Below, piece by piece: positions 2,938 through 52,738 of a stretch of DNA of 64,000 nt (positions within the stretch are counted from its first letter, which is position 1; each line of letters begins with the position of its first letter). Both the position numbers and the translations under genes were made by a program. The notes beneath the pieces are model-generated. The model ran no database searches. It was given only the letters and a program-made list of their open reading frames with translations, and had not been told where the DNA came from. The DNA comes from Isurus oxyrinchus (taxonomy: Eukaryota), in the NCBI GenBank assembly GCA_026770705.1, contig JANJGN010000013.1, positions 58,652,001-58,716,000 on the forward strand, given 5' to 3'.

Positions 2938-4528
2938 GAATGGTATTCAATTGTTAGCGGGAGTGTGTTTTATAAGTGGTCTGCTAGGGATAGCGATTCA
3001 GTTCAGCACTGGTAGCATTTTATTTATTCATGTGTGCTTTGTCCGGGGGCGGGTCCTTGAACCATTCAGCTGCTGATGCTTCCTCCTGAGCCGTTTCCGT
3101 GGCACTCTTTTTTTCCCCATTGTCTTCCACTGTCAGGGCCAGTTCCCAAGTGTAGCTCAGCAGAGGCGGGGACTGAAGCTGCACTGCTGGCTTCACTCTA
3201 AAGCACACGCCAGCATTCTAGGTTAACAGGCGCCGATAGCATTGCCAGCCTTGTAAATGCATTGAGCTGTTGGATCTCATTTTTATATCCAAGCTGATCT
3301 CATTATATAATTTTTAATGTATTTTAGCAAATAGCTTGCACAAGCAGAAATCAAACATCAAATTAATATATCCCTCACTTTTTGACTTAAGGGGACATTT
3401 AATGTCAACAAGCTTTTCTGAAAAACAATGAGTTTGCATTTACAACTTTTGATTTAACTCCAACGTTGATTAAATCAACATTTAGAAAATATCTTAGAGA
3501 AATATATAGGCAGTGAGAGTGCAATTAGTGTACATATCAAGACTTGTATATTTTGCAATTTAGTTTTAACATCTAATTGAGCGAAATAATGAAATATTCT
3601 GCTACTTGTACCTTTCCGAATTAAATTAGAGTTTTATTTACAATTTAATGGCAACCTTTGCCAGAAAGCAAAAGTAAATTGAGATATTTCAATTAATGGC
3701 TGAAACATTCCAAGAAAGCCAGAATTAATTAATTAATCAATTAGAGACCTGCCCGTTTATTGGTTTAGTAGCCTTCACTGTAGAAATTATTTTGAAATTA
3801 TCAGGTGGTTGTCAATTCAGCGTCTTGTAGCATCCATCATTCTCTCTCCAGATCACTAAAAATAGGTCCCTTACCACATCGAGAATTGTTTGTGTTGTCA
3901 CCAATACCCTAAACAATGTAGATTCCCATTTATACAACACGTGCTGTAATTCTCACCAAAACTCCAAAATTCCGATAGGAAAACTGTGAACAAGGGCTCA
4001 TCCTATTTCGAACGCACGCCAGAAACCCCGCTACCGGTCCCCCAATTTGCCATCCAAAATGGCATACGTTGGCATTTCTTTCTCCGAATAGCTACAATTC
4101 CTCCTCCAAATATGCAGCCTTATCTGTTTCAAACGTTAGGCTCTCGCAAGTAATGGTGTTACATAGGCAACGGGGACATAGCAGAAAATCTTATTGCTCT
4201 GCGCCTTAAGTCTTCTTGCTACTTGCGCGGACCTGTCGGTTACACGAACCTTTCATCATCTCGTGTTATGCTGCTCAACAGCGTGCAGAGATGAAATTTA
4301 AACAGCGCCCCTAGCATATCCTTGAACGTCTGTTTTATCTGTGGACATTCATACCCTGTCCCGCCAAGTAGCACTGGAGATAATTTCACGGATTCTCCTT
4401 CAAACATTAAAAAAAACCTTTCCATTCCTATAAAAACAAAGAAAACTGCGGATGCTGGACATCCAAAACAAAAACAGAATTACCTGGAAAAACTCAGCAG
4501 GTCTGGCAGCATCGGCGGAGAAGAAAAG

Positions 4529-4567
4529 AGTTGACGTTTCGAGTCCTCATGACCCTTCGACAGAACT
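4529..4567 (-). ncRNA. Minimal type I hammerhead ribozyme motif (variant core)
   Basis: Minus strand AGUU-CUGUCGA-A-GGGUC-AUGAG-GACUC-GAAA-CG-UC/AACU. Confidence 0.72.
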
Positions 4568-4752
4568 TGATTTCGAGTCCAAGAAAGAGTTGAAATATAA
4601 GCTGGTTTAAGGTGTGTGTGTGGGGGGGCGGAGAGATAGAGAGAGAGAGGCCTCTCTCTCTCTCTATCTCTCCGCCCCCCCCCCCCCCCCCCCCCCACAC
4701 ACACACACCTTAAACCAGCTTATATTTCAACTCTTTCTTGGACTCGAAATCA

Positions 4753-4791
4753 AGTTCTGTCGAAGGGTCATGAGGACTCGAAACGTCAACT
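4753..4791 (+). ncRNA. Minimal type I hammerhead ribozyme motif (variant core)
   Basis: AGTT CTGTCGA A GGGTC ATGAG GACTC GAAA CG TC AACT; predicted cleavage after C4787. Confidence 0.72.
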
Positions 4792-5069
4792 CTTTTCTTT
4801 CCATTCCTATGTTCATCAGCATGGGGTTTGCAAGTTACCGAGCGATAATCGCAGTGCTAAAAACTACAGACTATGACAACAACTACTAAATCGGTCGGGA
4901 CCTCAATTTACGAGCTTCCAGTAGCGCAAATTCGCATTGATTGTTGATGGGGAAAAAAAAACAAGGCTAACAATGTACGTTATGGTAGCAGCGAGGTAGA
5001 TAAGTATTTGACATCTAGCACTGTGCAATGAAGCAGAGGTTAATTATTAATCTCGTACTAAATGATGCA

Positions 5070-6870
5070 CTGGGAAAAAGTGCAATCGTATCCCATATGA
5101 AGTTTGAAAGTGACATACTCCAATCCCAAACGGCAATCTTATATTTAAACAAAGCCAATTACATATACATGAGAAGAGCTCTGCCTAAGACTGCTTATAT
5201 AAATAGGCCACAGGGCATGACGGTAAATGAAAAACGTGAAGCATTTAAAGAAACAATTCAAAATGTTCAATAAAAATGCATTTCATTATAAAAAGAAAAA
5301 AACGAGAGATCTATCCGTGGTTTATTAAGAATGCTCAGGATCGTGTTCATTTAAAAGAAGAAGCTTTATAATGTTGCAATAGGAAGCCGGAGGATTGGAG
5401 TGTTTTAGAAACCAGCAAAGGATCACCAAAACTTTGATAGGAAAGAAAGAAAAAATAGAATATGAGAGTAAAGTAACGAAAAATATAAGGGCAGATTGCA
5501 AGAGCTTTTACAAGTGTATAAAAATGAAAGCAGCTAAAACTTAGAGGCAGAGACTTGAGAAATTATCATGGGGAACGAGGAAATGACAGATATGTTGAAC
5601 AAGACGTTTGTGTTTGTATTCACAGCAGGAGACGCAAGACACATATCAGGAATAGAGGTTAACCAAGAGGTTAATAAAAATTAGGAACTTCAAGTAATTG
5701 ATATCAGCAGATAAAGGTATTAGAGGTTAGAGCACCAAAATCCAATAAATCCCCCGGACCTGATGGCCGACATAATAACGTTCTAAAAGAGGTAGCTGCA
5801 GAGATAGTGGATGTGCTGGTTTAAATTTTCCAAAACTCCCTAGATTCTAGAAAGGTCCCAGAAGATTGAAAATTCTCAGATGTAACTGTACTATTCAAGA
5901 GAGAGAGAGAAAGAGAGAGAGAGAACAGAACTACAAGCCAGTTTGACATCAGTTGTTGGGAAAACGCTGGAATCTCTTATTAAGACAGTCTAAACAATGC
6001 ACTTAGAAAATCATGGCATGATCAGACAAAGTCCGTTTGGTTTTACAAAAGAGAAATCGTGTTTGAGAAATGTAAAATGTTTGAGGGTGTGACTAGTGGG
6101 GTAAATAAAAGGGAACCAGTAGATGCAGTATACTTGGATTTTCAAAGGCTTTTAATAAAGCACCACATGAAAGGTAAATTTGCATGATAAAGGTTTGTGG
6201 AATTGGAGATCATGTTTTGGCATTGGTAGAGGATTGGTTAATGAGCAGGATGCAGAGTAGGATAAATGCAGCGTTTTCAAGTTGGCATTCTGTAACTAGT
6301 GGAGTGCCAGAAGGATCAGTGCTGAGATATCAGCCCTTTATAGACTGTATTGATGACTTAGGTGAAAGGATCGAGATTATCTAAATTTCCCGAGGAAGGA
6401 TAAGCTTGGCTTGATACATTAGATTGGTCCCTTGGATGAGAGGGTTGCCCTATGATGAGAGATTGAGTAAAATTAGGCCTATACTCTTTGGAGTTTACTA
6501 GAATTGGAGGTGATTTCATTGAAACTTTTAAGATCTGAAGTGGCATGATAGAGTAGACAATAAGCAGTTGATCCCCCAGGCTAGGGAACTGACAGTACGG
6601 ATAAGGGCCTTATCATTTAAGACTGAGAAGGGGAGAAATGTCTTCACTCAATCTGTTCGGGGCCTTTGGAATTGTCCGTCACCAGAGGGTTTGGATGTTC
6701 CATTGCCAAACACATTTAAGGTTGAGATGGGCAGTCTTTCAGTTTCTGAGGGATTCCAGGAATATGGGGTGCAGGCACAAAATGAAGGTAAGGCCAGTGC
6801 TCAGCCATAATTTTATTGAATGTTGGAGCAGATATGGGAGGTCATATGGTCTGCTCCTGTGCCATTTTCT
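5070..6870 (+). mobile_element. Degenerate CR1 LINE ORF2 fragment
   Basis: KSPGPDG-like, LDFQ-like and VTSGVPEGSVL motifs with many stops and frameshifts. Confidence 0.85.
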
Positions 6871-7139
6871 TAACTGTGTTCTTAGGTGCAACTAGCTTCT
6901 TTTGGTTAGATGTTTTATTTATCCAATCAGAGCCATGTAGTTTTCAGCAATAGATTTCTTCCCATCACTCATAATGCTACTGGATGCCCAAAGAGCCTGT
7001 CTGTAGGCCCCACCTCTTCCTTATCTACACACTGCTCCTTGGTGATATTATCTGAAGTTCCACATGTACACTGATGACATGCAGCCCTACCACAATTTTC
7101 TCAAGTTAAACACTGGGAAGATCTTCTTTGCCTGCAGCT

Positions 7140-8665
7140 TTTTTTATTCTTTCATGGGATGTGAGCAGCAGTGGCCAGGCCTGCATTACTTGCCCTTTGC
7201 TAATTGCCTTTGTGAAGGTGCTGCTGAGCCAATTTCTTGAACTGCTGTACCACATCTTGTTTAGGCAAACTCAAGTGCTGTTCGAAAGGAAGTTCCAGAA
7301 TTTCACCCAGTGACGGTGAGGTAATAATGATAAAGTTCCAAGTCAGGATGGTGCATGGCTTGGAAGAGAACTTGCAGCATGTGATGGTCCCAAGCATTTT
7401 CTGCTATTGTCCTTGTCGGTGGTAGAGGCCATGAAATTGGAAGCTACGGTTGAAGGAGGCTTGGTGAGTTTCTGCAGTGCATCTTGTACATGGTATACTC
7501 TGCTGCCATGGTGCGTCACAGTGGTGGAGGGTGTGAATGTTTAAGGTGGCAGATGGGATGCGGATCAAAGAGGTTGCTTTGTTCTGAATGGTGCCGATTT
7601 TCTTGAGCGTTGCTGCAGCTGCACTCATCCAGACAACTAGAAAGTATTCAATCACACTCCTGACTTGTGTCTTATAGATGTTGGGCAGGCTTCGTAGGGT
7701 CAGTTGCTTGCTGCAGAATTCCCAGCCTCTGACCTGCTCTTGTAGTTGCAGTATTTATATGACTGGCAAGTTCAATTTCTGATTAATGCTAACACTGAGG
7801 GCATTAATGATGGGTGATTCAATGATGGTAGTGCCTTTGAATGGCAAGGGAAAATGGTTAGATTCTCTTCTGTTGGTAATGGTCATTGCCTGGCACTTGT
7901 ATGGTGCAACTGTTACTTATCATTTATATCTCTAATATGAATATTGTTCAGGTCTTCCTCCATATGGACACAGAATGCATTAGCATCTGCAGAATTGCAA
8001 ATGACATTGAACACTGTGCATTCATCAGCAAACATTCCATTCATGAAGCAGTTGAAGATGGCCTAAGTCACTGCCCTGAGGAACACTTGCAGCAATGTCT
8101 TGGGACTGAAGTGACTGGCTCCCAACAACTGCAACCATTTTCCTTTGTGCTACATATGACTTCAACCAGTGTAGAGTTTCCCCATTGATATTCATTGACT
8201 TCAATTTTGCCAAGGCTCCTTGATGCCACAGTCAGTCAAATGCTGCCTTGATGTCAATAGCAGTCACTTTTACCTTCTATTGAGTTCGGTTATTTTAGCC
8301 ATGTTTGAACCAAGGCTTTAACGGAGGCAGAAGTTGAGCAGCCCTGGCAGAACCTAAACTGAGCATCACTGAGCAGGTTATTGCTGTGATAGTGCAATGT
8401 CATAGAATTGCCAATACCATCTTCCATCATTTTGCTGATAATTGAGAGTAGACTCAGAATGGATAATTGGCCAGATTTGTCTTGTCCTGCCTTTTTATGG
8501 TCAGGACATACCTGGGCAATTTTGAGCACTATCTGTTCAATGCCAATGCTGGAGCTGTACTGGAAAAGCTTGGCTAGGAGTGTGACCAGCTCTTGGGCAC
8601 AAGCCTTCAGTACATTGCCGGGGTGTTGTCAGGGCCCATTGCTTTTGCTGTATTCAGTGTCTTCT
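7140..8665 (-). mobile_element. Degenerate CR1/L2-group LINE, 3' part, inserted in an older L2 fragment
   Basis: Minus-strand peptides KIAQVCP..LLSIISKMME, ASVPQGS and WMSAA..TLKK..TIQNKA; L2-like sequence flanks it at about 6960-7100 and 8670-9100. Confidence 0.75.
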
Positions 8666-9769
8666 GCATTAGTGAAACGCTCATCCATGTCATTCTTACC
8701 TGCCAGCTCGATTATCATAGTACTCTCCTGGTTGACAGTACATCCTGCACCCTTCACATACATAATCTGATTCAAAACTTGACATTATTGCACTACTCAC
8801 AGTCACTATCTGGTCACTGAATGCCTTGATGTAAAATTCTCACCCGCATGTTTGAACCCCTATATAGCCTTACTTCAATGTACCTCTAATCTCATCACTC
8901 TCTTAGAAATCTGCACATGACCAACCAAATGTTTTGTCCATGCTCCATTCCTTTTCCATCACCAATGGAAGGTGTGCCTTCTGCGGCCGACACTCTGCAC
9001 CTGCAATTTACTTCTTAAGCTTCGCCACTAAACTCTCCTTCATAAAGACCTTCCTTAAAACCCAAGTCTGACCACATTTTTGGTTAGCCTTCCTAATGGA
9101 AAAAAAACATTTTAGGGCAGTAGAATTGGCGCAATGCATACAGATTTAGCAGTAGCAGTCTACACCCAAGTTGTGCATAGGTCCAACCGCTATTTTTGAC
9201 ACAGTTTGTTAACAGGCATTAGGCCCATTAAATACCTTCATCAGATGCTTAACTTCTGCAGAAGTATACTTCTACTTATTTTCTTCCTGAGAAGCGGGAT
9301 AGTTGTCATGCGTGCTCAACAGAGGACTTTTTCTCCCTGTAGTATCCAACTAAAGACATGTTTTAGCAAAATTACCCCACAGTCCCGGTGACTCCTCCAT
9401 CCATTCCTGTTGTCCAATCGAAGGCCTCATGAGAAGCTATCGATTGAGTTCTCCATACCTTGAAGCTGCAATGGGAACATGCACTCTCGGTTTTGGCGTG
9501 GCCCATCGATAAAGGTTATGTGCAGCACTTAGGTGTTGTTCCTTGCACTTTTCTTGAACTTGACATGCACTTATTCACCTCGATGGTTGAAAACCACATT
9601 GAGACTGGGAGGAGGAAGTTGAGGCGCACGCTTGCAATGATCTTCCTCTGTAGTTACTGCAATTTGACTTGTCTCCCTACTTGAACATAGCCACAGTTGC
9701 AGTGTTCCTGAGATCCCCCAGATGCGCCCTAATTCTCAGATGGGGGCCATGAGATTGTACCACTGTTAC

Positions 9770-16460: not shown

Positions 16461-16494
16461 GTGGGCCATAGGCCTTATAGACGGTGTAGCACTT

Positions 16495-16780
16495 TGTTAC
16501 AACTAAGTGGTTAGCTAGGCCCTTTCAGAGGGCATTTAAGAGTCAACCACAGTAATGTGGATCTGGAATCACATTAGGCCAGACCAGGTAAGGACGGCAG
16601 ATTTCCTTCCCTAAAGGGTATTAGTAAACCAGATTTTTTTTAACAACAATAGATTCGTGGTCATCATTAGACTGCTAATTCCATATTTTTGTTGAATTCA
16701 AATTTCGATCCGAAGCATTAACCCGGGTCTCTGGATTACTGATCCAGTCACAATACCTCTTTGCCAAAACACCACTGTCC
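16495..16780 (-). mobile_element. tRNA-derived SINE (same family as 672-916)
   Basis: Shared core GGCCAGACCAGGTAAGGACGGCAGATTTCCTTCCCTAAAG. Confidence 0.7.
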
Positions 16781-22701: not shown

Positions 22702-22727
22702 CAGCCTGCAACTTAACGCCAATCAGA

Positions 22728-24719
22728 GTTGAAAACAAAGAAAACTGCGGATGCTGGAAATCCAAAACAAAACAGAAATTACCTGGAAAAACTCAGCAGG
22801 TCTGGCAAGCATCGGCGGAGAAGAAAAGAGTTGACGTTTCGAGTCTCATGACCCTTCGACAGAACTTGATTTCGAGTCCAGGAAAGAGTTGAAATATAAG
22901 CTGGTTTAAGGTGTATGTTGTGGGGGGGGGGGGGGGGGGGGGGGGAGGAGAGAGAGAGAGAGAGACAGAGGTGCTTGTTGTAGACAAACAAGCAGTGATA
23001 GAAGCAGATCATCAAAAGATGTCAGTAACAATGGTACAAAAGAACACATAGGTGTTAAAGTTAAGTTGGTGATATTATCTAAACGAATGTGCTAATTAAG
23101 AATGGATGGTAGGGCACTCAAGGTACAGCTCTAGTGGGGGTGGGGGGGAGCATAAAAGATTTTAAAATATTTAAAAATAATGGAAATAGGTGGGAAAAGA
23201 AAAATCTATAAAATTTATAGGGAAAAAAAAGGGGGGAAAAAGGGGGAAACAGAAAGGGGGTGGGGGATGGGGGAGGGAGCTCACGACCTAAAGTTAATTG
23301 AATTCAATATTCAGACCGGAAGGCTGTAAGGTGCCTAGTCGGAAGATGAGGTGTTGTTCCTCCAGTTTGCGTTGGGCTTCACTGGAACAATGCAGTAAGC
23401 CAAGGACAGACATGTGGGCAAGAGAGCAGGGTGGAGTGTTAAAATGGCAAGCCACAGGGAGGTTTGGGTCATTCTTGCGGACAGACCGCAGGGTGTTCTG
23501 CAAAGCGGTCGCCCAGTGTTACGTTTGGTCTCTCCAATGTAGAGGAGACCACATTGGAGCAACGAATGCAGTAGACTAAGTTGGGGAAATGCAAGTGAAA
23601 TGCTGCTTCACTTGAAAGGAATGTTTGGGCCCTTGGGACGGTTGAGGAGAGGAGGAAGTGAAGGGGCAGGTGTTACATCTTTTGCGTGGGCATGGGGTGG
23701 TGCCATAGGAGGGGGTTGAGGAGTAGGGGGTGATGGAGGAGTGGACCAGGGTGTCCCGGAGGGAGCGATCCCTACGGAATGCGATAAGGGGGGTGAAGGG
23801 AAGATGTGTTTGGTGGTGGCATCATGCTGGAGTTGGGCGGAAATGGCGGAGGATGATCCTTTGAATGCGGAGGCTGGTGGGGTGATAAGTGAGGACAAGG
23901 GGGACCCTATCATGTTTCTGGGAGGGAGGAGAAGGCGTGAGGGCGGGATGCGCGGGAGATGGGCCGGACACGGTTGAGGGCCCTGTCAACGACCGTGGGT
24001 GGAAAACCTCGGTTAAGGAAGAAGGAGGACATGTCAGAGGAACCGTTTTTTGAAGGTAGCATCATCGGAACAGATGCGACGAAGGCGAAGGAACTGGGAG
24101 AATGGGATGGAAGTCCTTACAGGAAGCGGGGTGTGAGGAGCTGTAGTCGAGGTAGCTGTGGGAGTCGGTGGGTTTGTAATGGATATTTGTGGACAGTCTA
24201 TCACCAGAGATTGAGACAGAGAGGTCAAGGAAGGGAAGGGAAGTGTCAGAGATGGACCACGTGAAAATGATGGAGGGGGTGGAGTTTGGAAGCAAAATTA
24301 ATAAATTTTTCCAAGTCCCGACGAGAGCATGAAGCAGCACCGAAGTAATCATCGATGTACCGGAGAAAAAGTTGTGGAAGGGGGCCGGGGAGGACTGCAA
24401 CAAGGAATGTTCCAACTTTAACTTTAACACCTATTGTGTTCTTTGTACCATTGTTACTGACATCTTTTGATGATCTGCTTCTATCACTGCTTGTTTGTCT
24501 ACACAAGCACCTCTGTCTCTCTCTCTCTCTCTCCTCCCCCCCCCCCCCCCCCCCCCCCCCCACACATACACCTTAAACCAGCTTATATTTCAACTCTTTC
24601 CTGGACTCGAAATCAAGTTCTGTCGAAGGGTCATGAGGACTCGAAACGTCAACTCTTTTGTTCTCCGCCGATGCTGCCAGACCTGCTGAGTTTTTCCAGG
24701 TAATTCTGTTTTTGTTTTG
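22728..24719 (-). mobile_element. PLE: 5'-truncated copy plus a short inverted arm
   Basis: 15-bp TSD TTAACGCCAATCAGA at 22713-22727 and 24720-24734. Frameshifted RT (FLRYIDD) and GIY-YIG (LLYIGET..HFN..GLN) on -. Inverted arm 24412-24719 joined through a CCA microhomology. Hammerhead motifs at 22829-22866 (-) and 24616-24654 (+). Confidence 0.93.
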
Positions 24720-24844
24720 TTAACGCCAATCAGAAGCTGCCAGATCCTCGCTGTGTGTCAGATATATCCCAATCTAACAGAATGATAAAGAATTGTTTTC
24801 GTGATTGTATTTCTGCATGCTTCGATATATTAAGGAAAAGAGAT

Positions 24845-24985
24845 TGACACAAACAAAGGGAACATGCTATGGATGCTGGAAATCTGAAAGTTGAAACAAA
24901 AAGTACTGGAAATGCTCAGTAGGCCTGGCAGTGGAGGGAGAAACAGAGTTAGGGTTTCAGGACGAAGATCTTTCTTCAGGAATGA
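24845..24985 (-). mobile_element. Old PLE-related terminal fragment with a degenerate hammerhead
   Basis: GGATGCTGGAAATCTGAAA..CTCAGTAGG tail; minus strand CTGAAGA..GAAA..AACTC. Confidence 0.55.
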
Positions 24986-29779: not shown

Positions 29780-29920
29780 GAAACAAAAGCAAAATACTGC
29801 GGATGCTGGAGGTTAGAAATAAAAACTGAAAATGCTGGGAAAACTCAATAGGTCTGGCAGCATCTGTGGAGAGAGAAATAGAGTTAACGTTCTGAGTCCA
29901 GTATGACTCTTCAGTGGAAT
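29780..29920 (-). mobile_element. Old PLE-related terminal fragment with a degenerate hammerhead
   Basis: AAAATACTGCGGATGCTGG..CTCAATAGGTCTGGCAGCATC..GAGTTAACGTT..GAGTC..GACTCTTC. Confidence 0.6.
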
Positions 29921-32450: not shown

Positions 32451-32706
32451 TGGAAAGATAGCAGGAAGAGTAGCATGGAGTATGTGAGGCTGCTACAGGT
32501 TAGCAAGCAGCGACAAGCACAATGTCATGATAATAAAGGAAAAATCACCGAACTGCGTCAGGAAATATTGGACTTTAAAAATAAGACCCGAGTTTTTAAA
32601 ACAGGCACACATGCCATTGGCTGGAATGCTGCAGGGTGACTCCCTAAGAGGTAATGGGCCCCCATTCTGTTGCCAGACAAGGCACTTCTAATGACATCCA
32701 GAAACT

Positions 32707-32786
32707 AATTACCTGGAAAAATTCAGCAGGTCTGGCAGCATCGGCGGAGAAGAAAAGAGTTGACGTTTCGAGTCCTCATGACCCTT
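32707..32786 (-). mobile_element. 80-bp solo fragment of the young PLE terminus
   Basis: Near-identical to 4478-4557 (AATTACCTGGAAAA..CATGACCCTT); truncated inside the hammerhead. Confidence 0.85.
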
Positions 32787-35663
32787 AGGTTGAAATCGTG
32801 ACATTGATTGGACCTTAGCCTATTCCTTGATAATTTAGAAAATGACTGCAAGTTAGTTTGTTGCCAATCGTTAATGGATGTGGCTTCACTAATTAGGCCG
32901 TCAGTTACTGCACATCCCTAATTGCTCTTGCGGGTTTGTTGATGTGCTGCCGATGTGGAGTTTGTACACCCACAGTGTTTTACGGGAGGGACTTCCAGGG
33001 CTTCAACCTAGCAATAGTAAGGGAAGGCTGATTTGATTTGGATGAGTACGAATTTGTCAGACTGCGGCTTCACTGGCCTGTGAGACAACTCTCTCAATAT
33101 TGATACAAGTATCTACATATTAGTGAGGAGGACTTTGCAGAGTTGACCGTGCTGGGTGATATACCCCGTGCCTCGGGTGATGTCGGGTGGTCCGTCCACG
33201 TTTATTCTTGTTGGACCTTTCCGTAATTATATACTGCACATAAACATATTCCTTCACTTGCTCGCCTTGGATTAGTGTGAAGAGCTCATCGACTTCTTTG
33301 ACACTGGGGTTTAGACCGTCTGCTCAGCTACCTTTTGCTTCTCCTTTCCCCTCTCTCATATTCTCGATTCTTTAACTTGCTCCAGTTTTGCTTATCCTTT
33401 TCCCTCACGCATTCTCTAATCTCATATTGACCAAGTGAACAACGTTTTGTTCAACTGACATATTCTTAGTAACCTCCTGACCATCCTGCTTCCCTTCTTC
33501 ACTTGCAGGCCAGTCAACATATTAGTACATTCTTCCCAAGCACTTGCCTCTCCCTCTGTAAACTGCTACCATCAAACTTGTCCTCAGGAAACCTGCACAT
33601 GGCCTGTCTGTCCTTGCAGGCTACAGTGTCGTCTCAAACTTCCCTTTTCACTTCAATGTCCTCCCAAATTCTTGCCCATCTTTTCCGCAAATCCGTGTTT
33701 GAAAATCCATAATTAGATTTCCACGCCTGACACAACACAACAAAGCCACAAATGTCATACTCTGTGACTGTGCATGTTGTTGAAAATTCATCTTTTTCTC
33801 GGCTGCTCCATAGCCTTTGTCATAGTTGACCACGCCGTCTTCTTCCAAAGTCGTCATTTTCCCTCGTTCCACTGTTACCAAGATAAGCATCTCCAGATAA
33901 CCTTTAGCGACGGATTCTCTTTCCACTCATATTGCTACTTCTGGATTCCTGCAAAGATTTGTTTTTGGACCCTGGCGCTTCATTCATGCTTGGTACCATT
34001 GTCTGAAAACTTATCTTCATTTCCACATGTACGCTGGTGCCACGAAGCACTGCCTCTCCAGCACCTCTCCGACTGCTGCAGTGGCAATGCATTGCCAGAC
34101 TGCTTGCTTAATCCAGTCCTGAATGGGCCACAATTTCAACCACTTAACCATTGGGAAAACCAAAGCCATTTTGTTCAACCTCAAGAATAGAGTATGTACG
34201 TTGCCAGCATCACAGTTAAAAGTGGAGGTAGCATGGGAATTAAATACGATAAAACATAATTGAAGAGAGTTCGGTATCTATAAGTTTGGCAGCACCTCGA
34301 GTAGTAGAAGCCAATCGGTTGGGATCGGATGCAGCCTAGGTTGCTGAGGGAAGTATGATTGAAATTGCGAGGCTCTACCAACCATCTCCTGATTCTCCTC
34401 AGATTTGGGAGTGGAGTCAAGGGGCCAATGTTAAATTTTTATCCAAAAAAGGAGAAAGGGATAAACTCTGCAACCGCAGAGCAGCCACCTAACATCGGTG
34501 GTGGTGAGAATTTTCCGGATAATGACCCTGAAAGATCATTACTTGAAAAAAACACGGATTAATAAATTAGAGTCGGCACAAGTTTGTTACGGTTGTGTGA
34601 ATGGACATTCAAATGAATTTTTAAAAAATGTTACATAATAGATGTGTTGGCAAAATTGTAGCCCATGGGATGAAAGATGCGGTTGTTGCATGAAAGCGAG
34701 ATTGGCTGAGGGACAGAAAGCAGACGGGAATGGTAAACGGGTGATTTTGTTCAGAGAGGAGGGAAATGTACGCTGGTGTCTTACAGGACTCACTGCTGGG
34801 CTGATATCTCTTTCTGAATATCTTTTGAAAGCCTGGACTTGAATACATAGAGCATAATTTCAAAGTTTGTTAATGGCGCGGAACTCAAAAATATGAACTG
34901 TGCAGACGGGCAACAGACTTCAGGGGGCAATGTCAACTCAGAGGTATAATTTTAAAGGGGTTACAGGAACAGAGAGACCTCGCTCGTTACATATGTATGT
35001 CTTAAAGGTGCCAGGACAGCTTGAGGAAGCTGTTAAAATGCACAGGAGCTATTGGCGTTGCAATAATAGTAAAATGAAAACTCCAGCAGAGTAAAACGGA
35101 CTTCCGATTCACTATCGCCGATTTTGTCCCTTTGCTCAAGAACAACTCACCCACAATGAGTTGGGAAATATCGATGAGTAGATTCAACGGCGCAGCAGCA
35201 TCTACACATCACACATTACATATTTCTTTTTCTTGTAAAGTAACTTAGCACCCTCCTTCATGAGCATTGAAAACACTGCAACCTAAAAAATCTGAAAACA
35301 ATTGCATTATCGATTGGACATCTTTTACATCAGAAATAAAAACCTTTTTGAAATTGAAATCCGTTCAATCGTTTTATTGAACAGCTGTAATGGAATAGAT
35401 GAGCAGTAAGAAAATACGTAGAAAATAAGAATCTAACTAACATAATTAGATGCATATAAGCTGCCAAATTGATATTGAGATTTCAGTTAACACCAACAAT
35501 CCTTCGCTCAAATGCTTTTAAAATCAAGAAGATTTAGTTCTAAGTTCATTATGATTTTTCTTAAATCTCCGAAATGCAATAACTTTCTACCATTTTTGTC
35601 ACATGCAAGAAACGAACGTCGATTAACAAACATTCTCAACTGGGCCAAGTGCCGTTTCCATAA

Positions 35664-37727: not shown

Positions 37728-37739
37728 GCTATCACATGC

Positions 37740-42400: not shown

Positions 42401-43769
42401 TTAGTGAAAATTTAATACACTAGAAGTGTCCAATGCCCTGAATAAGATAGTCAGTTAATGTGCGACTCAGAATTTTAGATTAAAAACATAATGGTAGCTT
42501 TAAAAATGGTATCTTGTGAGTTAGAGTGTGAGAGAAACCAGTACGAACTCATCCTAGAAATATTGTGGTGTTTTCAGTGTGAATCCTGGGACTCTCCGTT
42601 ACAGTGAACAATGAAAACAGGGTGGCCCGGGGCGGGGGTGGGGGTGGGTGGAGGGGGGGGGGGGGGGGGGGGGTGGTGCGGGGGTGCGGGGGCGGTGGGT
42701 GGTTGGAAGCCCCAGGTGGTGGGAGATGGAATTATTAGATTCAATGAAACAACTTCCGACTGATCTCGTATTTAGTACCAGCGAGAAGTGGGGGAGTTTC
42801 TTCATCGCACTACGCTATGTTAGCCAGGCAGTAGTAACAACTTAACCAGATCTGGGAGGTTACCGGGCTGTGGCTCCATGTGAAAAAGAGATGCTGGGGC
42901 GCCTCAGAGGGCAATGTTTCTTTGGAGAACAGAGTAAGGACAGGCAAACTGCTAATGATGTGTTAAAAAGTCATTTACCCAAAGACCTCTCAGTATTGGG
43001 AGGAACAAGGGCGATATACTGGCCGCACCTTTCGAGGTATAAGGAGGCATATTACACCTGAGTCTCAATCATGGGAATCCCAAAGAAATAACCTGCCCTT
43101 TGGGGAAAATATGAGTCATATACGGGATGTACAATGAGTCATTTCCTTGTTATGTATACAGAAGCGACTCCGGTGGGGTGGGGGTGGGGACGGGGGTTGT
43201 GGGGGGTGTTGAATATCATTGCTGTTCACTCAGCAACACTCTGGGCAGCTGCAGACGCTGGAAGTGTCCAACATGCTGTGGTTAAACTGTGGGAATACGG
43301 GTTATAAAGCTAGTTCTTCGGCCCCTATCCTCTCGGCCAAAGTTTAATGCCAACCGGCGGGTAAAAATAGGATGTCCCAGTTTAAGCCCCCGGCCCACGA
43401 ATGGGCTCTTGTTGTTTCTACTGGCATGCTCCACTGCAAAGAATTACATTACGAGACCACCCATATTCTTCTAAATTTGACAACCCTCACAATAGTCGGA
43501 TTTTTTGTGCCTTGCTTCTTGAAAACTGGTTCCTAAAATTTCTTTAACGTCTGATATTTCCCTAATCTCAGTGTTTTCACCTGTTTTTGTTGTTAACCTG
43601 CCCACGGTTATATTCATTAATCTCTCCTCATTGATATACATTTAGAAACGTTTACGATCTGTTTTAATGTCTCTTGCTGGTCTACTCTGTAATTATATTT
43701 CCTCATCAATTGCTTGATCTTCATGTATGCTATTCTTTCGGAAACATAAGCCTCTTCTTTTGATACACT

Positions 43770-46060: not shown

Positions 46061-46642
46061 GGTATTTGTATCTATACGTATCTATACACACACGCATAGG
46101 CACACAGACACACACACAAACGTATAGACAAACACATAAACTTGGAGTGGAGCCAAGGTGAGCAGAAGTGCTTCAGCTAATCCCATAGTAGTGGTGAGAT
46201 TTGTTTAGAGGACACTTCGCGCACTCTTTATTACATGAGCCTTAACGTTACCGAAAAAAATAATAGGTTTGACGTACATTGCATCAGAAATGAAAGACAA
46301 GAAAATGGTGCTGCATTTGGTCAATTATTTTATTGAACAGCTTTATTGGGAAGGTCTAATCGTGATTGAATATTTAAAATGCAATCACCATATTTTTGCC
46401 TTTAATTAATGTTCTCGGATGCATAACCATGAATTAATGAACATTGACTTTTCATCGCGAATACCGGCAATAGGAGATGGAAGAGCCTTTAAAAATAGCA
46501 AGTCTTACAAAGCGAAGCTCCAATCGCAATGGTCATTTGCTTAAATCTCCGAAATACAATCAATTTTTACAGTTCTGTCACATGAAAGAAATGAATAGGA
46601 ATGAACAAACATTCTCAGCTGGGTCAAGTACACTTTCTGAAA

Positions 46643-46930
46643 TCACATTCAGCTGGACTTCGAGCTGCTTGATGTTTAATCAGGCAGGAGTAAAGCTCGT
46701 GTGAGTTCCAGGCTGAGGCTGACAGCATCAGATAACTGTTCACGCTGAACGTGTTGTCCGCATCCTGCTGGTCTCAACCCCGTTGCCTCTGACACTGCCA
46801 TCTACAGTCCATTCAATCTCCACAGCTCCTGTCTTAAAACCGCTCACCAAACACACCAGGGTCACCATGTTCTTCGCTGTGATTTGATCCCATGAAGGCG
46901 GAAGGACAGAGACCGATGGTTCCTGCGGAT
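46643..46930 (-). pseudogene. IgL type II/lambda constant pseudo-exon C4
   Basis: Acceptor mutated AG to AA. Reads PQEPSVSVLPPSWDQITAKNMVTLVCLVSGF..EWTVDGSVRGNG, then frameshifts and deletions; ends SKSS*M*; AATAAA 46329-46334 (-). Confidence 0.92.
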
Positions 46931-47029
46931 TTATTTTTTAAAAACTTGGTTTAGCAGTGTTGGGGAATGTTTTGTTTGAAACATGAGATTTTTTTTCTAA
47001 GCAATATAATTCGAATTTGTTTATTCAGT

Positions 47030-47295
47030 TTAATACAACGAATAGGTCAATTTCATTTACAATTATTTCAATATGTTACTTCATCCGAGGAAGTTTAAAG
47101 GTGGGAGAACCAATGGATCTTTCGCATCTGAAGAAGCGAATTTCAGTTTTAATGGCTGACTGCTTAATACAACGAATAGGTCAATTTCATTTACAATTAT
47201 TTCAATATGTTACTTCATCCGAGGAAGTTTAAAAGTGGGAACCCGATGGATCTTTCGCATCTGAAGAAGCGAATTTCAGTTTTAATGGCTGACTG
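47030..47295. repeat. Two-copy tandem duplication, period about 134 bp
   Basis: TTAATACAACGAATAGG...GGCTGACTG starts at 47030 and again at 47164, with only a few differences. Confidence 0.92.
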
Positions 47296-47498
47296 GACTT
47301 GATATTTTTGTTCTGTCCAAGTTTACGGAAAACAAAACTTGTACATTACATTTCTTGATGTCATCCCTGAATGAAATAGAATTCAACTTTACTGTAAATA
47401 TATTGCCAACTATAACACGGTCGTTATATAGCTGCCGTATCTCCTGTTTGAGACGCCGGGGCGCTGGGAACTATTAGAAATAGGATTAAAATACTAAA

Positions 47499-50400
47499 AT
47501 AAAAACAAAAAAAACAAAAAAAAACTGCGGATGCTGGAAATCCAAAACAAAAACAGAAATACCTGGAAAAACTCAGCAGGTCTGGCAGCATCGGCGGAGA
47601 AGAAAAGAGTTGACGTTTCGAGTCCTCATGACCCTTCGACAGAACTTGATTTCGAGTCCAAGAAAGAGTTGAAATATAAGCTGGTTTAAGGTGTGTGTGG
47701 GGGGCGGAGAGATAGAGAGAGAGAGAGGTGGTTGTGTAGACAAACAAGCAGTGATAGAAGCAGATCATCAAAAGATGTCAGCGACAATGGTACAAAAGTA
47801 CACATAGGCGTTAAAGTTAAAGTTGGTGATATTATCTAAACGAATGTGCTAATTAAGAATGGATGGTAGGGCACTCAAGGTACAGCTCTAGTGGGGGTGG
47901 GGGGAGCATAAAAGATTTTAAAATATTTAAAAATAATGGAAATAGGTGGGAAAAGAAAAATCTATATAATTTATAGGGAAAAAAAAGGAAAAAGGGGGAA
48001 ACAGAAAGGGGGTGGGGATGGAGGAGGGAGCTCACGACCTAAAGTTGTTGAATTCAATATTCAGACCGGAAGGCTGTAAGGTGCCTAGTCGGAAGATGAG
48101 GTGTTGTTCCTCCAGTTTGCGTTGGGCTTCACTGGAACAATGCAGAAAGCCAAGGACAGACATGTGGGCAAGAGAGCAGGGTGGAGTGTTAAAATGGCAA
48201 GCGACAGGGAGGTTTGGGTCATTCTTGCCGACAGACCGCAGGTGTTCTGCAAAGCGGTCGCCCAGTTTACGTTTGGTCTCTCCAATGTAGAGGAGACCAC
48301 ATTGGGAGCAACGAATGCAGTAGACTAAGTTGGGGGAAATGCAAGTGAAATGCTGCTTCACTTGAAAGGAGTGTTTGGGCCCTTGGACGGTGAGGAGAGA
48401 GGAAGTGAAGGGGCAGGTGTTACATCTTTTGCGTGGGCATGGGGTGGTGCCATTGGAGGGGGTTGAGGAGTAGGGGGTGATGGAGGAGTGGACCAGGGTG
48501 TCCCAGAGGGAGCGATCCCTATGGAATGTCGATAAGGGGGGTGAAGGGAAGATGTGTTTGGTGGTGGCATCATGCTGGAGTTGGCGGAAATGGCGGAGGA
48601 TGATCCTTTGAATGCGGAGGCTGGTGGGGTGATAAGTGAGGACAAGGGGGACCCTATCATGTTTCTGGGAGGGAGGAGAAGGCGTGAGGGCAGATGCGCG
48701 GGAGATGGGCCGGACACGGTTGAGGGCCCTGTCAACGACCGTGGGTGGAAAACCTCGGTTAAGGAAGAAGGAGGACATGTCAGAGGAACCGTTTTTGAAG
48801 GTAGCATCATCGGAACAGATGCGACGAAGGCGAAGGAACTGGGAGAATGGGATGGAGTCCTTACAGGAAGCGGGGTGTGAGGAGCTGTAGTCGAGGTAGC
48901 TGTGGGAGTCGGTGGGTTTGTAATGGATATTAGTGGACAGTCTATCACCAGAGATTGAGACAGAGAGGTCAAGGAAGGGAAGGGAAGTGTCAGAGATGGA
49001 CCACGTGAAAATGATGCAGGGGTGGAGATTGGAAGCAAAATTAATAAATTTTTCCAAGTCCCGACGAGAGCATGAAGCGGCACCGAAGTAATCATCGATG
49101 TACCGGAGAAAAAGTTGTGGAAGGGGGCCGGTGTAGGACTGCAACAAGGAATGTTCCACATACCCCATAAAGAGACAGGCATAGCTGGGGCCCATGCGGG
49201 TACCCATAGACACACCTTTAATTTGGAGAAAGTGAGAGGAGTTGAAGGAGAAATTGTTCAACGTGAGAACAAGTTCAGCCAGATGGAGGAGAGTAGTGGT
49301 GGATGGGGATTGTTCGGGCCTCTGTTCGAGGAAGAAGCTAAGGGCCCTCAGACCATCCTGGTGGGGGATGGAGGTGTAGAGGGATTGGATGTCCATGGTG
49401 AAGAGGAAGCGGTTGGAGCCAGGGAACTGGAAATTGTTGATGTGACATAAGGTGTCAGAGGAATCACGGATGTAGGTGGGAAGGGACTGGACAAGGGGAG
49501 AGAGAAGGGAGTCAAGATAACGAGAAATGAGTTCTGTGGGGCAGGAGTAAGCTGAGACGATCTGTCGCATCTGTTCCGATGATGCTACCTTCAAAAACGG
49601 TTCCTCTGACATGTCCTCCTTCTTCCTTAACCGAGGTTTTCCACCCACGGTCGTTGACAGGGCCCTCAACCGTGTCCGGCCCATCTCCCGCGCATCCACC
49701 CTCATGCCTTCTCCTCCCTCCCAGAAACATGATAGGGTCCCCCTTGTCCTCACTTATCACCCCACCAGCCTCCGCATTCAAAGGATCATCCTCCGCCATT
49801 TCCGCCAACTCCAGCATGATGCCACCACCAAACACATCTTCCCTTCACCCCCCTTATCGGCATTCCATAGGGATCGCTCCCTCCGGGACACCCTGGTCCA
49901 CTCCTCCATCACCCCCTACTCCTCAACCCCCTCCTATGGCACCACCCCATGCCCACGCAAAAGAAGTAACACCTGCCCCTTCACTTCCTCTCTCCTCACC
50001 GTCCAAGGGCCCAAACACTCCTTTCAAGTGAAGCAGCATTTCACTTGCATTTCCCCCAACTTAGTCTACTGCATTCGTTGCTCCCAATGTGGTCTCCTCT
50101 ACATTGGAGAGACCAAACGTAAACTGGGCGACCGCTTTGCAGAACACCTGCGATCTGTCGGCAAGAATGACCCAAACCTCCCTGTCGCTTGCCATTTTAA
50201 CACTCCACCCTGCTCTCTTGCCCACATGTCTGTCCTTGGCTTGCTGCATTGTTCCAGTGAAGCCCAACGCAAACTGGAGGAATAACACCTCATCTTCCGA
50301 CTAGGCACCTTACAGCCTTCCAGTCTGAATATTGAATTCAACAACTTTAGGTCGTGAGCTCCCTCCTCCATCCCCACCCCCTTTCTGTTTCCCCCTTTTT

Positions 50401-50842
50401 CCTTTTTTTCCCTATAAATTTTATAGATTTTTCTTTTCCCACCATTTCCATTATTTTTAAATATTTTAAAATCTTTTATGCTCCCCCCACCCCCACTAGA
50501 GCTGTACCTTGAGTGCCCTACCATCCATTCTTAATTAGCACATTAGTTTAGATAATATCACCAACTTTAACTTTAACACCTGTGTGTTCTTTTGTACCAT
50601 TGTCGCTGACATCTTTTGATGATCTGCTTCTATCACTGCTTGTTTGTCTACACAACCACCTCTCTCTCTCTCTATCTCTCCGCCCCCCACACACACACCT
50701 TAAACCAGCTTATATTTCAACTCTTTCTTGGACTCGAAATCAAGTTCTGTCGAAGGGTCATGAGGACTCGAAACGTCAACTCTTTTCTTCTCCGCCGATG
50801 CTGCCAGACCTGCTGAGTTTTTCCAGGTAATTCTGTTTTTGT
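47499..50842 (-). mobile_element. PLE (probably Neptune-like): 5'-truncated copy plus a 1.28-kb inverted arm
   Basis: 13-bp TSD TTAAAATACTAAA at 47486-47498 and 50843-50855. Left arm 47499-49561 (-), right arm 49564-50842 (+). Hammerhead motifs at 47608-47646 (-) and 50743-50781 (+). Confidence 0.95.
48032..49561 (-). CDS. Uninterrupted but 5'-truncated PLE reverse transcriptase + GIY-YIG endonuclease frame (about 510 codons)
   Basis: FTMDIQSLYTSIP, QIKGVSMGTRMGPSYA and FLRYIDD; Cys linker CPRKRCNTC; VYCIRCSQC..YIGET..RFAEH..HFN..LEE..GLN. Confidence 0.92.
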   Translation of the reverse strand: MVSAYSCPTELISRYLDSLLSPLVQSLPTYIRDSSDTLCHINNFQFPGSNRFLFTMDIQSLYTSIPHQDGLRALSFFLEQRPEQSPSTTTLLHLAELVLTLNNFSFNSSHFLQIKGVSMGTRMGPSYACLFMGYVEHSLLQSYTGPLPQLFLRYIDDYFGAASCSRRDLEKFINFASNLHPCIIFTWSISDTSLPFLDLSVSISGDRLSTNIHYKPTDSHSYLDYSSSHPASCKDSIPFSQFLRLRRICSDDATFKNGSSDMSSFFLNRGFPPTVVDRALNRVRPISRASALTPSPPSQKHDRVPLVLTYHPTSLRIQRIILRHFRQLQHDATTKHIFPSPPLSTFHRDRSLWDTLVHSSITPYSSTPSNGTTPCPRKRCNTCPFTSSLLTVQGPKHSFQVKQHFTCISPNLVYCIRCSQCGLLYIGETKRKLGDRFAEHLRSVGKNDPNLPVACHFNTPPCSLAHMSVLGFLHCSSEAQRKLEEQHLIFRLGTLQPSGLNIEFNNFRS

Positions 50843-52738
50843 TTAAAATACTAAACATATGTCAAATTTGTCCTAATGTCTTACGGTGTAATGAAATGCT
50901 CATCGGCTTTATTGCAAGCCATGCCTTCAGGGTTTGCTAATGAATAATCGAGAACAGCTAAAACACACTTGCTCAGGTAGGTTAACCAAGTGAGATTCTC
51001 CGCCCTTAGACCAGATGGTTTCAACCCCATAGTGGAAGCAGACCACGCAATCTAGGCTGACATTCCAGAAGAACGTCTCTCTGGCTAATTTGGCAACTTT
51101 TGGATTAGATTTAAACAGAGCTCCTTGTCAAATGGAGCTAAAATACCCCATTACAGTATTGGAGGAAGTCGCGACTGACTGTCGCGAATGTAAAGCAGAT
51201 TAACCAGTTTAACGGTCTCATTGCAATCTGTAGGAAATAGGTGGCGCGGGTGGCTGCGTGGATTATTGCTGCGGATTAATTATATATGACTTTTAAACTT
51301 TAATGCTGTGCCGCTTCTACCTGGAGGTAATTGAAGAAATCTCAACTTTCTACAATAATATAAAACAAGGGATAAAGAGCTCGAGCATTTATCATTGAAG
51401 TCAACGGAAATACAAATTAGGAAAAATGTGCAAACGTAGGCCGACACATTTCAGGTGTTTTACACTATCAACCAACACCAAATCTACCCAATGCATATTG
51501 TAATGAAGATTTACATTTCTAGATCTTCTCGAGAGGGTGCTAGCGCCAAAAGATATATGAGTGAGTTTGGTTCCATTATTAAAGTTGAGGACGTAACGAT
51601 TAAATATGATCAACACTATTAATACAACGGAATTGTTACTTTGAGTCACATTCTGATTTCTCTGATTACTGGTCTGTGCATCGAAATCACCAACAACTCA
51701 GGTCCGATTTCAACAGCAGAAATAACACAAGCTTTCTGACTGTATGACGCATGCTCAATGCACAGGATATTCTGGCAATGCAAATAGACCAATGAATTTA
51801 AATAATTTAATAATGCCACTGATCTCATGTTCGCATATATGTTAGTTTTAAAAAGACGTGAAACATGGCAATGTTCATTACAGAAAAGGCCAGGGAGTGA
51901 TTCGCTATTCTAATTTCAAATTCGCGTGCATTTCATTAGGCAAATATGCATGTCTTCTTTATGGGTAGCTTTATGAATTCAAAGCTTTGGATTCGGTGCG
52001 CCACAATTAACCAACGCGCAATAAATGATGTGTTACCTCACCGAGCGTCCATTCATCATGTGCAGTCAGTTTAAACCAGTATTTGGATTGAATTTCAGTT
52101 GTAATTAAAAGCCGCGATATTCAATGCAACAATAGCTCCAGCTAAAAACTTAATCGGGAGTTGAAAACGCAGAACATTAAAGGTTAGTTTCACCAGCTAT
52201 TTATGACCTTCTACTGCTCTTGCTATTCTGAAGGGCTATTTATATGGGGCTATTTTTACCCCATGTCCATTATTTCAAGTGTCTGGCGCAAATGATCATT
52301 ATTTATTTGTGCCAACAGGCACGGCGTTTTGGAAAGGTAGTTAAGGGACGCGGTAAGTAACCATTGAGCTTGTCTTTGTCGTTACTGGAGCATTTCCTGC
52401 AAGGTCACTCGATCTCGGATTCGGATTAAAGGTTCTCACTGATTTCCCCGTTCTATGGCGCCGAGATTCTGAGACGAGTTGCTATTGTGACTGAGGTAAG
52501 GCAGCTCAATGCAGGCCAAAACTCCATTCTCAACTCATAGGCTAGAAAATATTATAGAACTGGAAGGCTCAGATCTTAACCATTTAGTAGGGCAGCCTTG
52601 TAACATTTCAGTTTAATTTATGGTTCTTTGTTAAAAGGACGTTAACATTGTTTAAAACAAAATAACTACACAGTTATAGTATTTTGTCTTTAATCTGAAG
52701 CACGTTTTGAACAATGTAACGGAAATGGTTTTACTCAC

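What the first reader, a model, noticed from the sequence alone, without database searches (positions are those of the whole stretch)
4418..50855. Three young PLE insertions share one fold-back architecture: two 3' ends outward, a TSD, and arms from the same source
Seen: 4432-4796, 22728-24719 and 47499-50842 each consist of a 5'-truncated minus-strand copy joined head-to-head to a shorter plus-strand copy, inside a single TSD of 14, 15 and 13 bp. The left arm always runs about 100 nt past the hammerhead cut site, while the right arm stops about 10, 70 and 65 nt past it at T-rich matches to the target. Diagnostic variants are shared by both arms of one insertion but differ between insertions (GAGTCCAGGAAAG and GGTGTATG in both arms at 22-24 kb; GAGTCCAAGAAAG and GGTGTGTG in both arms of the other two). 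Established: PLEs can carry inverted pseudo-LTRs. Inference: here inversion looks like the standard product, with both target nicks priming reverse transcription near the same RNA end and the two cDNAs joined in the middle (blunt GG|CC, CCA microhomology, about 2 extra nt).
Basis: partly seen in the sequence, partly recalled or inferred. Interest (0 to 1): 0.8.

Follow-up and report, generated by a model that had tools for sequence, protein, structure and literature searches.

The report
Canonical head-to-head Penelope retrotransposon insertions
Three insertions of a very abundant shark Penelope-like retrotransposon are each a mirror-image pair of truncated copies inside one target duplication, which is real but is the published standard layout for this element class, so it is a clean example and not a new phenomenon.

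Summary
4432-4796, 22728-24719 and 47499-50842 are each a long minus-strand copy joined head-to-head to a shorter plus-strand copy, inside exact target duplications of 14, 15 and 13 bp. The copies encode reverse transcriptase plus a GIY-YIG nuclease, so they are a Penelope-like element (PLE).

For the third insertion, a contig from a sister species joins 47485 directly to 50843, with one copy of the duplicated target. The whole fold-back therefore arrived as one event. Ten informative sites group the two arms of an insertion together and none group them otherwise.

Three details need correcting:
- The third junction is a 3-nt microhomology, not 2 extra nt.
- The matches to the target at the short-arm ends are only 3, 0 and 2 nt.
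- The hammerhead core is non-canonical (CUGUCGA).

An inverted 5'-truncated copy, a 30-40 nt tail on one side only and a TSD of variable length are textbook PLE features (PMC8557442, PMC3846280). Cleavage and extension of both target strands was shown in vitro in 2024 (PMC11167929).

"Inversion is the standard product" is not shown, because six other related units in the window are solo. Priming from both nicks is the best-fitting mechanism (about 0.55). Self-priming is not excluded.

This scan reached the same verdict earlier on other DNA of this genome (s1-864202, s1-865399).

The parts
4418..4431 (.). Insertion 1, left copy of the 14-bp TSD (CTTTCCATTCCTAT)
   Evidence: family D2, 100% identical to 4797-4810
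4432..4650 (-). Insertion 1, long arm. It covers the 3' UTR end, the hammerhead-like motif and the tail, and runs 101 nt past GAAACGTC.
4651..4796 (+). Insertion 1, short arm. It ends 9 nt past GAAACGTC, with a 3-nt (CTT) overlap with the target. The inner junction is a blunt palindrome GG|CC at 4650|4651.
4797..4810 (.). Insertion 1, right copy of the TSD
22713..22727 (.). Insertion 2, left copy of the 15-bp TSD (TTAACGCCAATCAGA)
   Evidence: family D1
22728..24414 (-). Insertion 2, long arm (about 1.69 kb) with the tail. It has many 1-nt indels relative to insertion 3.
24412..24719 (+). Insertion 2, short arm, ending at the tail-less terminus 69 nt past GAAACGTC. It shares CCA (24412-24414) with the long arm.
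24720..24734 (.). Insertion 2, right copy of the TSD
47486..47498 (.). Insertion 3, left copy of the 13-bp TSD (TTAAAATACTAAA)
   Evidence: The empty site in the organism-B contig joins 47485 to 50843 (record 19).
47499..49566 (-). Insertion 3, long arm (2.07 kb) with the tail. It carries 509 open codons with RVT_1 and GIY-YIG and is 5'-truncated.
   Evidence: The inner end comes from the loose-end consensus at 49566.
48035..49563 (-). Partial PLE ORF with the YIDD RT motif, a CX4CxxC linker motif and a GIY-YIG nuclease with two Cys between GIY and YIG
   Evidence: Motifs were read from the translation and compared with PMC8557442.
49564..50842 (+). Insertion 3, short arm (1.28 kb), ending at the tail-less terminus 65 nt past GAAACGTC. 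It shares GTC (49564-49566) with the long arm, and its ORF copy is interrupted by a stop.
50843..50855 (.). Insertion 3, right copy of the TSD
50747..50777 (+). Hammerhead-like minimal motif CUGUCGA-A-GGGUC-AUGAG-GACUC-GAAA-CGUC. It is mirrored in every arm. The core departs from CUGANGA at A6.
   Evidence: Sequence. No Rfam match and no significant fold. The layout matches the PLE min-HHR description in PMC4209133.
32698..32796 (-). Young solo fragment of the same family (97.5% identical over 80 nt) with no inverted partner

Best explanation
What is shown. These are three independent insertions of a very abundant PLE. Its motifs point to the Neptune/Nematis type. By earlier scan notes the host is a probable shark. 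Each insertion has the canonical PLE unit:
- a long 5'-truncated copy that carries the extra tail of about 35-48 nt at its 3' end;
- a shorter inverted copy, joined head-to-head, that lacks the tail;
- one variable-length TSD around the whole unit.

What is inferred (about 0.55).
1. The GIY-YIG nuclease nicks both target strands 13-15 bp apart.
2. The 3'-OH of one nick primes cDNA at the distal internal start site, and this becomes the arm with the tail.
3. The 3'-OH of the other nick primes a second cDNA. It starts at the proximal start site (insertions 2 and 3) or at a short microhomology (insertion 1). The template is the same RNA or a sister RNA from the same source.
4. The two antisense cDNAs meet at their 3' ends, either by 0-3 nt microhomology or by an end-to-end template jump.
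5. Each cDNA is then extended on the other, which supplies both second strands and leaves two 3' ends facing outward.

The confidence given (0.55) is for the whole statement including the inferred mechanism. The identity as canonical single-event PLE fold-back insertions alone I put at about 0.95.
For: PLE identity:
- RVT_1 (E 1e-07) and GIY-YIG (E 4.5e-04) on the ORF in the insertion-3 long arm.
- The CX4CxxC and Cys-between-GIY-and-YIG motifs are visible in the translation, as described in PMC8557442.

Single event:
- Exact TSDs of 14, 15 and 13 bp.
- An organism-B contig (record 19, depth 18.8, flanks about 2-4% diverged) runs 51659..50843 and then directly 47485..47244. This is an empty site with one TSD copy.

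Real DNA and not a chimeric artefact:
- The arms of insertion 3 have acquired 17 substitutions and a stop codon in one arm.
- Independent Illumina reads of another individual show many fold-back joints of the same family (table 5).

Same source:
- Informative sites split 10:0:0, and the poly-C expansion is shared.

Both outer ends look like true initiation ends:
- The long arms all end within a few nt of ...GCAGTTTTCTTTGTTTT.
- The short arms of insertions 2 and 3 end within about 4 nt of 50842-50846. There, 8566 X23 reads and 28-43 contigs per run leave the element into unrelated sequence, with consensus agreement of 0.36-0.42 (table 7).
- Solo units use both termini.

Published in vitro work:
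- A PLE protein cleaves and extends both strands.
- It starts at two internal sites, and the tail is the sequence between them (PMC11167929).

Junctions:
- They show 0, 3 and 3 nt of overlap.
- Read-level joints carry 0-3 extra letters, as expected for template jumps (table 5c).
Against: - The tail is on the long arm in 3 of 3 insertions and never on the short arm. The in vitro work reports no strand difference in start site, so independent choice at the two nicks does not predict this. By my estimate it would happen by chance about 1-2% of the time.
- The commonest read-level joints are zero-loop palindromes (47646->50743 and 47649->50740), and insertion 1 is one too. Two separately primed cDNAs would end at the same nucleotide only if both run off the same RNA 5' end.
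- No read or contig with at least 31 nt on both sides was shown to bridge the inner junctions or the filled-site ends in the source organism (table 8). The inner structure therefore rests on the assembly plus indirect arguments.
- There are only three cases.
Confidence: 0.55

Rival explanations
1. Self-priming (snap-back). Only one nick primes cDNA on the RNA. The 3' end of that cDNA folds back on itself, with a loop of zero or a few nt in insertion 1 and loops of about 1.4 kb and 0.74 kb in insertions 2 and 3. It copies the nascent cDNA back towards the target and is then joined to the other target end.
For: - Arkhipova et al. 2013 inferred self-priming from palindromes at PLE inverted junctions (PMC3846280).
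- Insertion 1 and the best-supported read joints are perfect palindromes.
- The model explains directly why the short arm never carries the tail and why the arms share every diagnostic variant.
Against: - It does not predict that the short arms of insertions 2 and 3 stop at the same tail-less terminus that thousands of other copies use (table 7).
- It needs a 3-nt anneal 0.7-1.4 kb back on the same strand for insertions 2 and 3.
- A true hairpin should leave a few unpaired loop nt, but the commonest joints have none.
- Extension of both strands has been observed in vitro (PMC11167929).
Confidence: 0.3
2. L1-style twin priming on one RNA. The second nick primes internally, and the two cDNAs cover adjacent, non-overlapping parts of the template.
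For: A TSD around an inverted 5' part and microhomology at the junction.
Against: The arms overlap completely. The short arm repeats 146, 308 and 1279 nt that are already present in the long arm, and both arms start near the RNA 3' end. Classical twin priming gives adjacent segments.
Confidence: 0.05
3. Artefact or secondary event. Possibilities are a fold-back chimeric read carried into the assembly, two separate insertions, or a later inverted duplication of a simple insertion.
For: - Inverted repeats are hard to assemble (PMC8557442).
- No bridging read over the inner junctions was displayed.
Against: - The arms have diverged from each other (17 substitutions in insertion 3), which a chimeric read would not show.
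- One exact TSD encloses both arms, and the sister-species empty site lacks both arms at once.
- The short arm abuts the TSD at a canonical element terminus, which a later duplication would not produce.
- Fold-back joints of this family occur in runs from four studies.
Confidence: 0.03
4. A DNA-level fold-back or MITE-like transposon with terminal inverted repeats.
For: Inverted termini plus a TSD.
Against: - The inner junctions differ in all three insertions (element positions about 1839, 406/1738 and 1/739).
- The two ends are unequal, because only one has the tail.
- TSD length varies (13-15 bp).
- The arms are 3' ends of an element that encodes an RT.
Confidence: 0.01

Closest known systems
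Canonical EN+ Penelope-like element insertion unit (Evgen'ev & Arkhipova 2005 and Arkhipova 2006, as summarised in Craig et al. 2021, PMC8557442; Arkhipova et al. 2013, PMC3846280)
   Same: - A 5'-truncated copy with an adjacent inverted 5'-truncated copy, head to head.
- A 30-40 nt tail at one end only.
- A TSD of variable length.
- Palindromes or microhomology at the inverted junction.
- A hammerhead-like motif in the terminal repeat.
- RT plus a C-terminal GIY-YIG nuclease.
   Different: - No direct pseudo-LTR (partial tandem) is present in these three insertions. Both arms are simple 5'-truncated copies.
- The hammerhead core is non-canonical (A6 to U).
- The host is a cartilaginous fish with a very high copy number.
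PAc (Poseidon of Anolis carolinensis) in vitro system, Frangieh et al. 2024 (PMC11167929)
   Same: Two alternative 3' termini about 35-48 nt apart are used. That matches two internal RT start sites with the tail between them. Evidence that both target strands serve as primers agrees with cleavage and extension of both strands in vitro.
   Different: - PAc belongs to the Penelope/Poseidon clade, and its start sites lie in an AC-rich stem-loop inside the ORF. Here both termini sit in U-rich tracts (GUUUUUGUUUU and UUUCUUUGUUUU).
- The in vitro work saw no strand difference in start site. Here the tail is always on the longer arm.
L1 twin priming (Ostertag & Kazazian 2001; from my own knowledge)
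   Same: The second target nick is used as a primer, the result is an inversion inside one TSD, and the junction shows microhomology.
   Different: L1 arms are adjacent segments of one RNA, and only one 3' end faces outward. Here both arms begin near the RNA 3' end and overlap over the full length of the short arm.

Membership tests
Penelope-like elements (EN+) | Reverse transcriptase domain | tested here: met
   Pfam RVT_1, E 1e-07, 32.3 bits against a cut-off of 29.6. The YIDD motif is in the translation. The N-terminal RT motifs (such as DKG) are missing because the copy is 5'-truncated.
Penelope-like elements (EN+) | GIY-YIG nuclease C-terminal to the RT, with the CCHH motif (two Cys between GIY and YIG) | tested here: met
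   Pfam GIY-YIG, E 4.5e-04, 20.9 bits, just under the 22.6 cut-off. The sequence ...LVYCIRCSQCGLLYIGET...R...EH... shows the Cys pair between the motifs. Definition from PMC8557442.
Neptune/Nematis-type PLE | CX2-5CxxC Zn-finger-like linker upstream of GIY-YIG | tested here: met
   CPRKRCNTC is in the translation. Definition in PMC8557442. No phylogeny was made, so the clade is provisional.
Penelope-like elements (EN+) | Inverted 5'-truncated copy adjacent to the main copy, with the tail on one side only | tested here: met
   The tail is 32-48 nt and present only on the long arm in 3 of 3 insertions.
Penelope-like elements (EN+) | Variable-length TSD | tested here: met
   14, 15 and 13 bp. Empty site for insertion 3.
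Penelope-like elements (EN+) | Direct pseudo-LTRs from partial tandem copies | tested here: not met
   No direct repeat of the element end occurs within any of the three insertions. The literature treats this feature as frequent, not obligatory.
Penelope-like elements (EN+) | Hammerhead ribozyme motif in the terminal repeat | tested here: inconclusive
   No Rfam hammerhead match at the gathering score or at E<=10, and the fold is not better than shuffles. By eye the layout fits the PLE min-HHR: a 4-bp helix I, a bulged base before helix II and a palindromic ACGU helix III (PMC4209133). The core, however, is CUGUCGA and not CUGANGA.
L1-type twin-priming inversion | The two arms are adjacent, non-overlapping parts of the template | tested here: not met
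   The short arms are fully contained in the long arms' coordinates.

The most novel reading that the evidence does not exclude
This shark family has a rough order of 10^4 young copies. In it, both outer ends of the fold-backs sit at the two canonical RT start sites. The arms share their source. Read-level joints pile up as zero-loop palindromes at one position, the 5' edge of the hammerhead-like motif, which is also where the older solo units begin. Taken together, this would be in vivo evidence that PLEs normally solve second-strand synthesis by priming from both nicks and copying each cDNA on the other, with run-off at a defined RNA 5' end giving the palindromes. It would make this genome a natural data set for settling the still undefined PLE integration pathway.
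Probability: 0.4. Interest if true: 0.5.

Novelty: already known. Interest (0 to 1): 0.22.

Why it matters
How PLEs produce their inverted and tandem structures remains open. Craig et al. 2021 call these features of the transposition cycle 'still undefined', and Frangieh et al. 2024 leave the later steps 'yet to be validated'. These three loci add clean in vivo examples, including one with an exact empty site in a sister species, that agree with the in vitro finding of extension from both strands. They add nothing that specialists do not already expect. The practical value is for annotation, because such fold-backs should be called as single PLE insertions. This genome could also support a large census of junctions.

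Tried and rejected
- Rfam scans of the whole window at gathering score and of 50600-50860 at E<=10 found no hammerhead family. Folding 50738-50792 gave z = +0.83. The 'hammerhead cut site' is therefore only a positional landmark.
- Folding the last 104 nt of the element showed no significant structure (z = -0.72).
- I looked up eight ORF variants of insertion 3 in the protein collection, hoping to reach other loci for a census. None is on record.
- I did not run the large protein searches.
- Pyatkov et al. 2004 (PMC522041) is not held.
- Read laying could be called only once, so empty sites for insertions 1 and 2 were not tested. Only 15 of about 2,540 joints were displayed, so the inverted fraction genome-wide could not be computed.
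- Contig depths from Logan are not copy numbers and were not used as such.
- Rejected readings are listed under the rival explanations: assembly artefact, two separate insertions, later inverted duplication, MITE-like DNA transposon and classical twin priming.
Full report
OBSERVATION

| Insertion | Span | TSD (exact) | Long arm | Short arm | Inner junction |
|---|---|---|---|---|---|
| 1 | 4432-4796 | CTTTCCATTCCTAT, 14 bp | 4432-4650 (-) | 4651-4796 (+) | blunt palindrome, centre 4650\|4651 |
| 2 | 22728-24719 | TTAACGCCAATCAGA, 15 bp | 22728-24414 (-) | 24412-24719 (+) | CCA overlap |
| 3 | 47499-50842 | TTAAAATACTAAA, 13 bp | 47499-49566 (-) | 49564-50842 (+) | GTC overlap |

Measured from GAAACGTC, the long arms run 101, 105 and 113 nt further.

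WHAT THE ELEMENT IS

The long arm of insertion 3 carries 509 open codons. They hit Pfam RVT_1 (E 1e-07) and GIY-YIG (E 4.5e-04, just under the curated cut-off). The translation shows three motifs:
- YIDD, the RT motif;
- a CX4CxxC motif upstream of the nuclease;
- two cysteines between GIY and YIG.

These are the marks of endonuclease-containing PLEs of the Neptune/Nematis type, as defined in Craig et al. 2021 (PMC8557442). No tree was made, so the clade is provisional.

The 'hammerhead' is only hammerhead-like:
- Rfam finds nothing, even at E<=10.
- The fold is no better than shuffles.
- The core reads CUGUCGA and not CUGANGA.

Its layout does fit the minimal PLE hammerheads described by Cervera and de la Pena 2014 (PMC4209133). 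It has a 4-bp helix I, a bulged base before helix II and a palindromic ACGU in place of helix III.

ONE EVENT PER FOLD-BACK

A 1327-nt contig from a run labelled as a different organism (X5, record 19, depth 18.8) has flanks about 2-4% diverged from the window. It runs 51659..50843 and then continues directly at 47485..47244. That is an exact empty site with a single copy of the 13-bp target, so both arms of insertion 3 arrived together after the two lineages split.

The arms have since diverged. There are 17 substitutions and 3 gaps in 1281 nt, and one arm's ORF copy has a stop. This rules out a chimeric fold-back read as the origin.

In the source organism's own run (X1), contigs reach only 19 nt into the right end. 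They stop in the masked A-rich start of the left arm. By the tool's 31-nt rule, the filled junctions are therefore not independently bridged.

SAME SOURCE FOR BOTH ARMS

I aligned the four arms of insertions 2 and 3 over the shared region of about 300 nt. Ten informative sites and a 22-nt poly-C expansion group (2L,2R) against (3L,3R). No site supports either alternative grouping.

Insertion 1 cannot be distinguished from insertion 3, because arm 1L against arm 3R has 0 mismatches in 182 nt. The test therefore rests on one contrast.

ENDS AND JUNCTIONS

- **Long-arm ends.** All three long arms end within a few nt of ...GCAGTTTTCTTTGTTTT. Insertion 3 has a stuttered T-rich extension.
- **Short-arm ends, insertions 2 and 3.** These end within about 4 nt of each other, at ...CTGTTTTTGT(TTTG). 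The same place is a genome-wide breakpoint. There, 8566 raw reads of X23 and 28-43 contigs per contig run leave the element into unrelated sequence, with consensus agreement of 0.36-0.42 (table 7).
- **Tail.** The difference between the two termini is 32-48 nt, and this is the tail.
- **Short-arm end, insertion 1.** It ends elsewhere, with a 3-nt match (CTT) to the target. Insertions 2 and 3 show 0 and 2 nt of match, so 'T-rich matches to the target' is weak.
- **Inner junction, insertion 3.** 1626 reads from other copies continue past 49566 with one consensus at 0.97 agreement. The junction is therefore a 3-nt overlap, not 2 extra nt.

HOW GENERAL IS THE INVERSION?

A profile search of the window finds six further units related to the element's last 100-135 nt:
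- one young fragment, 32698-32796;
- five older units, at 24850-24980, 29784-29915, 53474-53608, 60771-60870 and 61002-61079.

None has an inverted partner scoring above shuffled controls. In this window, therefore, 3 of 9 units are fold-backs, and no tandem copy is present.

In the reads the family is extremely abundant. X23 depth is about 8-9 thousand per arm end, against about 0.4 on the flanks, which suggests very roughly 10^4 copies. The 15 best-supported joints are all fold-back joints between the two arms (table 5):
- They cluster at 47640-47649 -> 50740-50754.
- Several are perfect zero-loop palindromes (47646->50743 and 47649->50740).
- Others carry 1-3 filler letters (table 5c).

This hot spot is the 5' edge of the hammerhead-like motif, about 35 nt upstream of the GUC. 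It is also where four of the five older solo units, and the young solo fragment, begin (query positions 1917-1927). Only 15 of about 2,540 joints were shown, so the inverted fraction cannot be computed.

COMPARISON WITH WHAT IS KNOWN

Craig et al. 2021 describe the typical PLE insertion. [quoted passage not shown]

Arkhipova et al. 2013 describe the same units with 8-10-bp TSDs and a 31-bp tail on one inverted pLTR. They also report palindromes at the inverted junction, which they interpret as self-priming.

Frangieh et al. 2024 show in vitro that a PLE protein cleaves and extends both target strands. It starts at two adjacent internal sites, and the tail is the sequence between them.

MECHANISM

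I favour priming from both nicks, followed by cDNA-cDNA joining and mutual copying (about 0.55). Three observations support this:
- Both outer ends sit at termini that solo copies and thousands of other copies also use.
- Both-strand extension has been seen in vitro.
- Junctions with 0-3 nt of overlap or filler fit end joining by annealing or template jump.

Two observations do not fit simply. The tail is always on the longer arm, and zero-loop palindromes are the commonest joints. Both are easier to explain by self-priming (about 0.3), or by two cDNAs running off one defined RNA 5' end.

Classical twin priming, an assembly artefact, a secondary duplication and a DNA transposon are each contradicted by the coordinates, the empty site or the arm divergence.

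VERDICT

Earlier follow-ups in this scan reached the same conclusion for other pieces of this genome (s1-864202, s1-865399). I re-derived it here independently from the sequence, the reads and the papers.

Noticed in passing
window 24850-24980, 29784-29915, 32698-32796, 53474-53608, 60771-60870, 61002-61079, plus the three long arms: All nine tail-side PLE 3' units in the window lie on the minus strand (two-sided binomial about 0.004). By earlier notes the window is in an immunoglobulin light-chain region, so an orientation bias relative to transcription is possible.
   Followed up: no
window 47640-47649 and 50740-50754: This is a read-level hot spot of fold-back joints. Many are zero-loop palindromes. 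It sits at the 5' edge of the hammerhead-like motif, about 35 nt upstream of the GUC. Four of the five older solo units, and the young solo fragment at 32698-32796, start at the same element position. This suggests a defined RNA 5' end or a strong RT stop there.
   Followed up: partly
window 47111-47243: One unit of a tandem duplication of about 135 bp (47060-47194 repeated at about 47195-47295) is absent from the sister-species contig that also shows the empty site.
   Followed up: partly
window 22728-24414: The long arm of insertion 2 carries 27 small gaps, mostly single-base insertions, relative to insertion 3 over 1.69 kb. That is far more indels than substitutions would suggest. The cause could be decay, an error-prone copy or assembly error, and it was not resolved.
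   Followed up: no
window 4611-4700, 22919-22945, 24531-24562, 47700-47706: The G/C homopolymer in the 3' UTR ranges from 6 to about 28 nt between arms and insertions. It even differs between the two arms of insertion 1 (7 against about 26).
   Followed up: no
window 24734-24850: Insertion 2 landed about 115-130 nt from an older solo unit of a related family. This is consistent with the reported tendency of PLE nucleases to cut in or near their own sequence.
   Followed up: no
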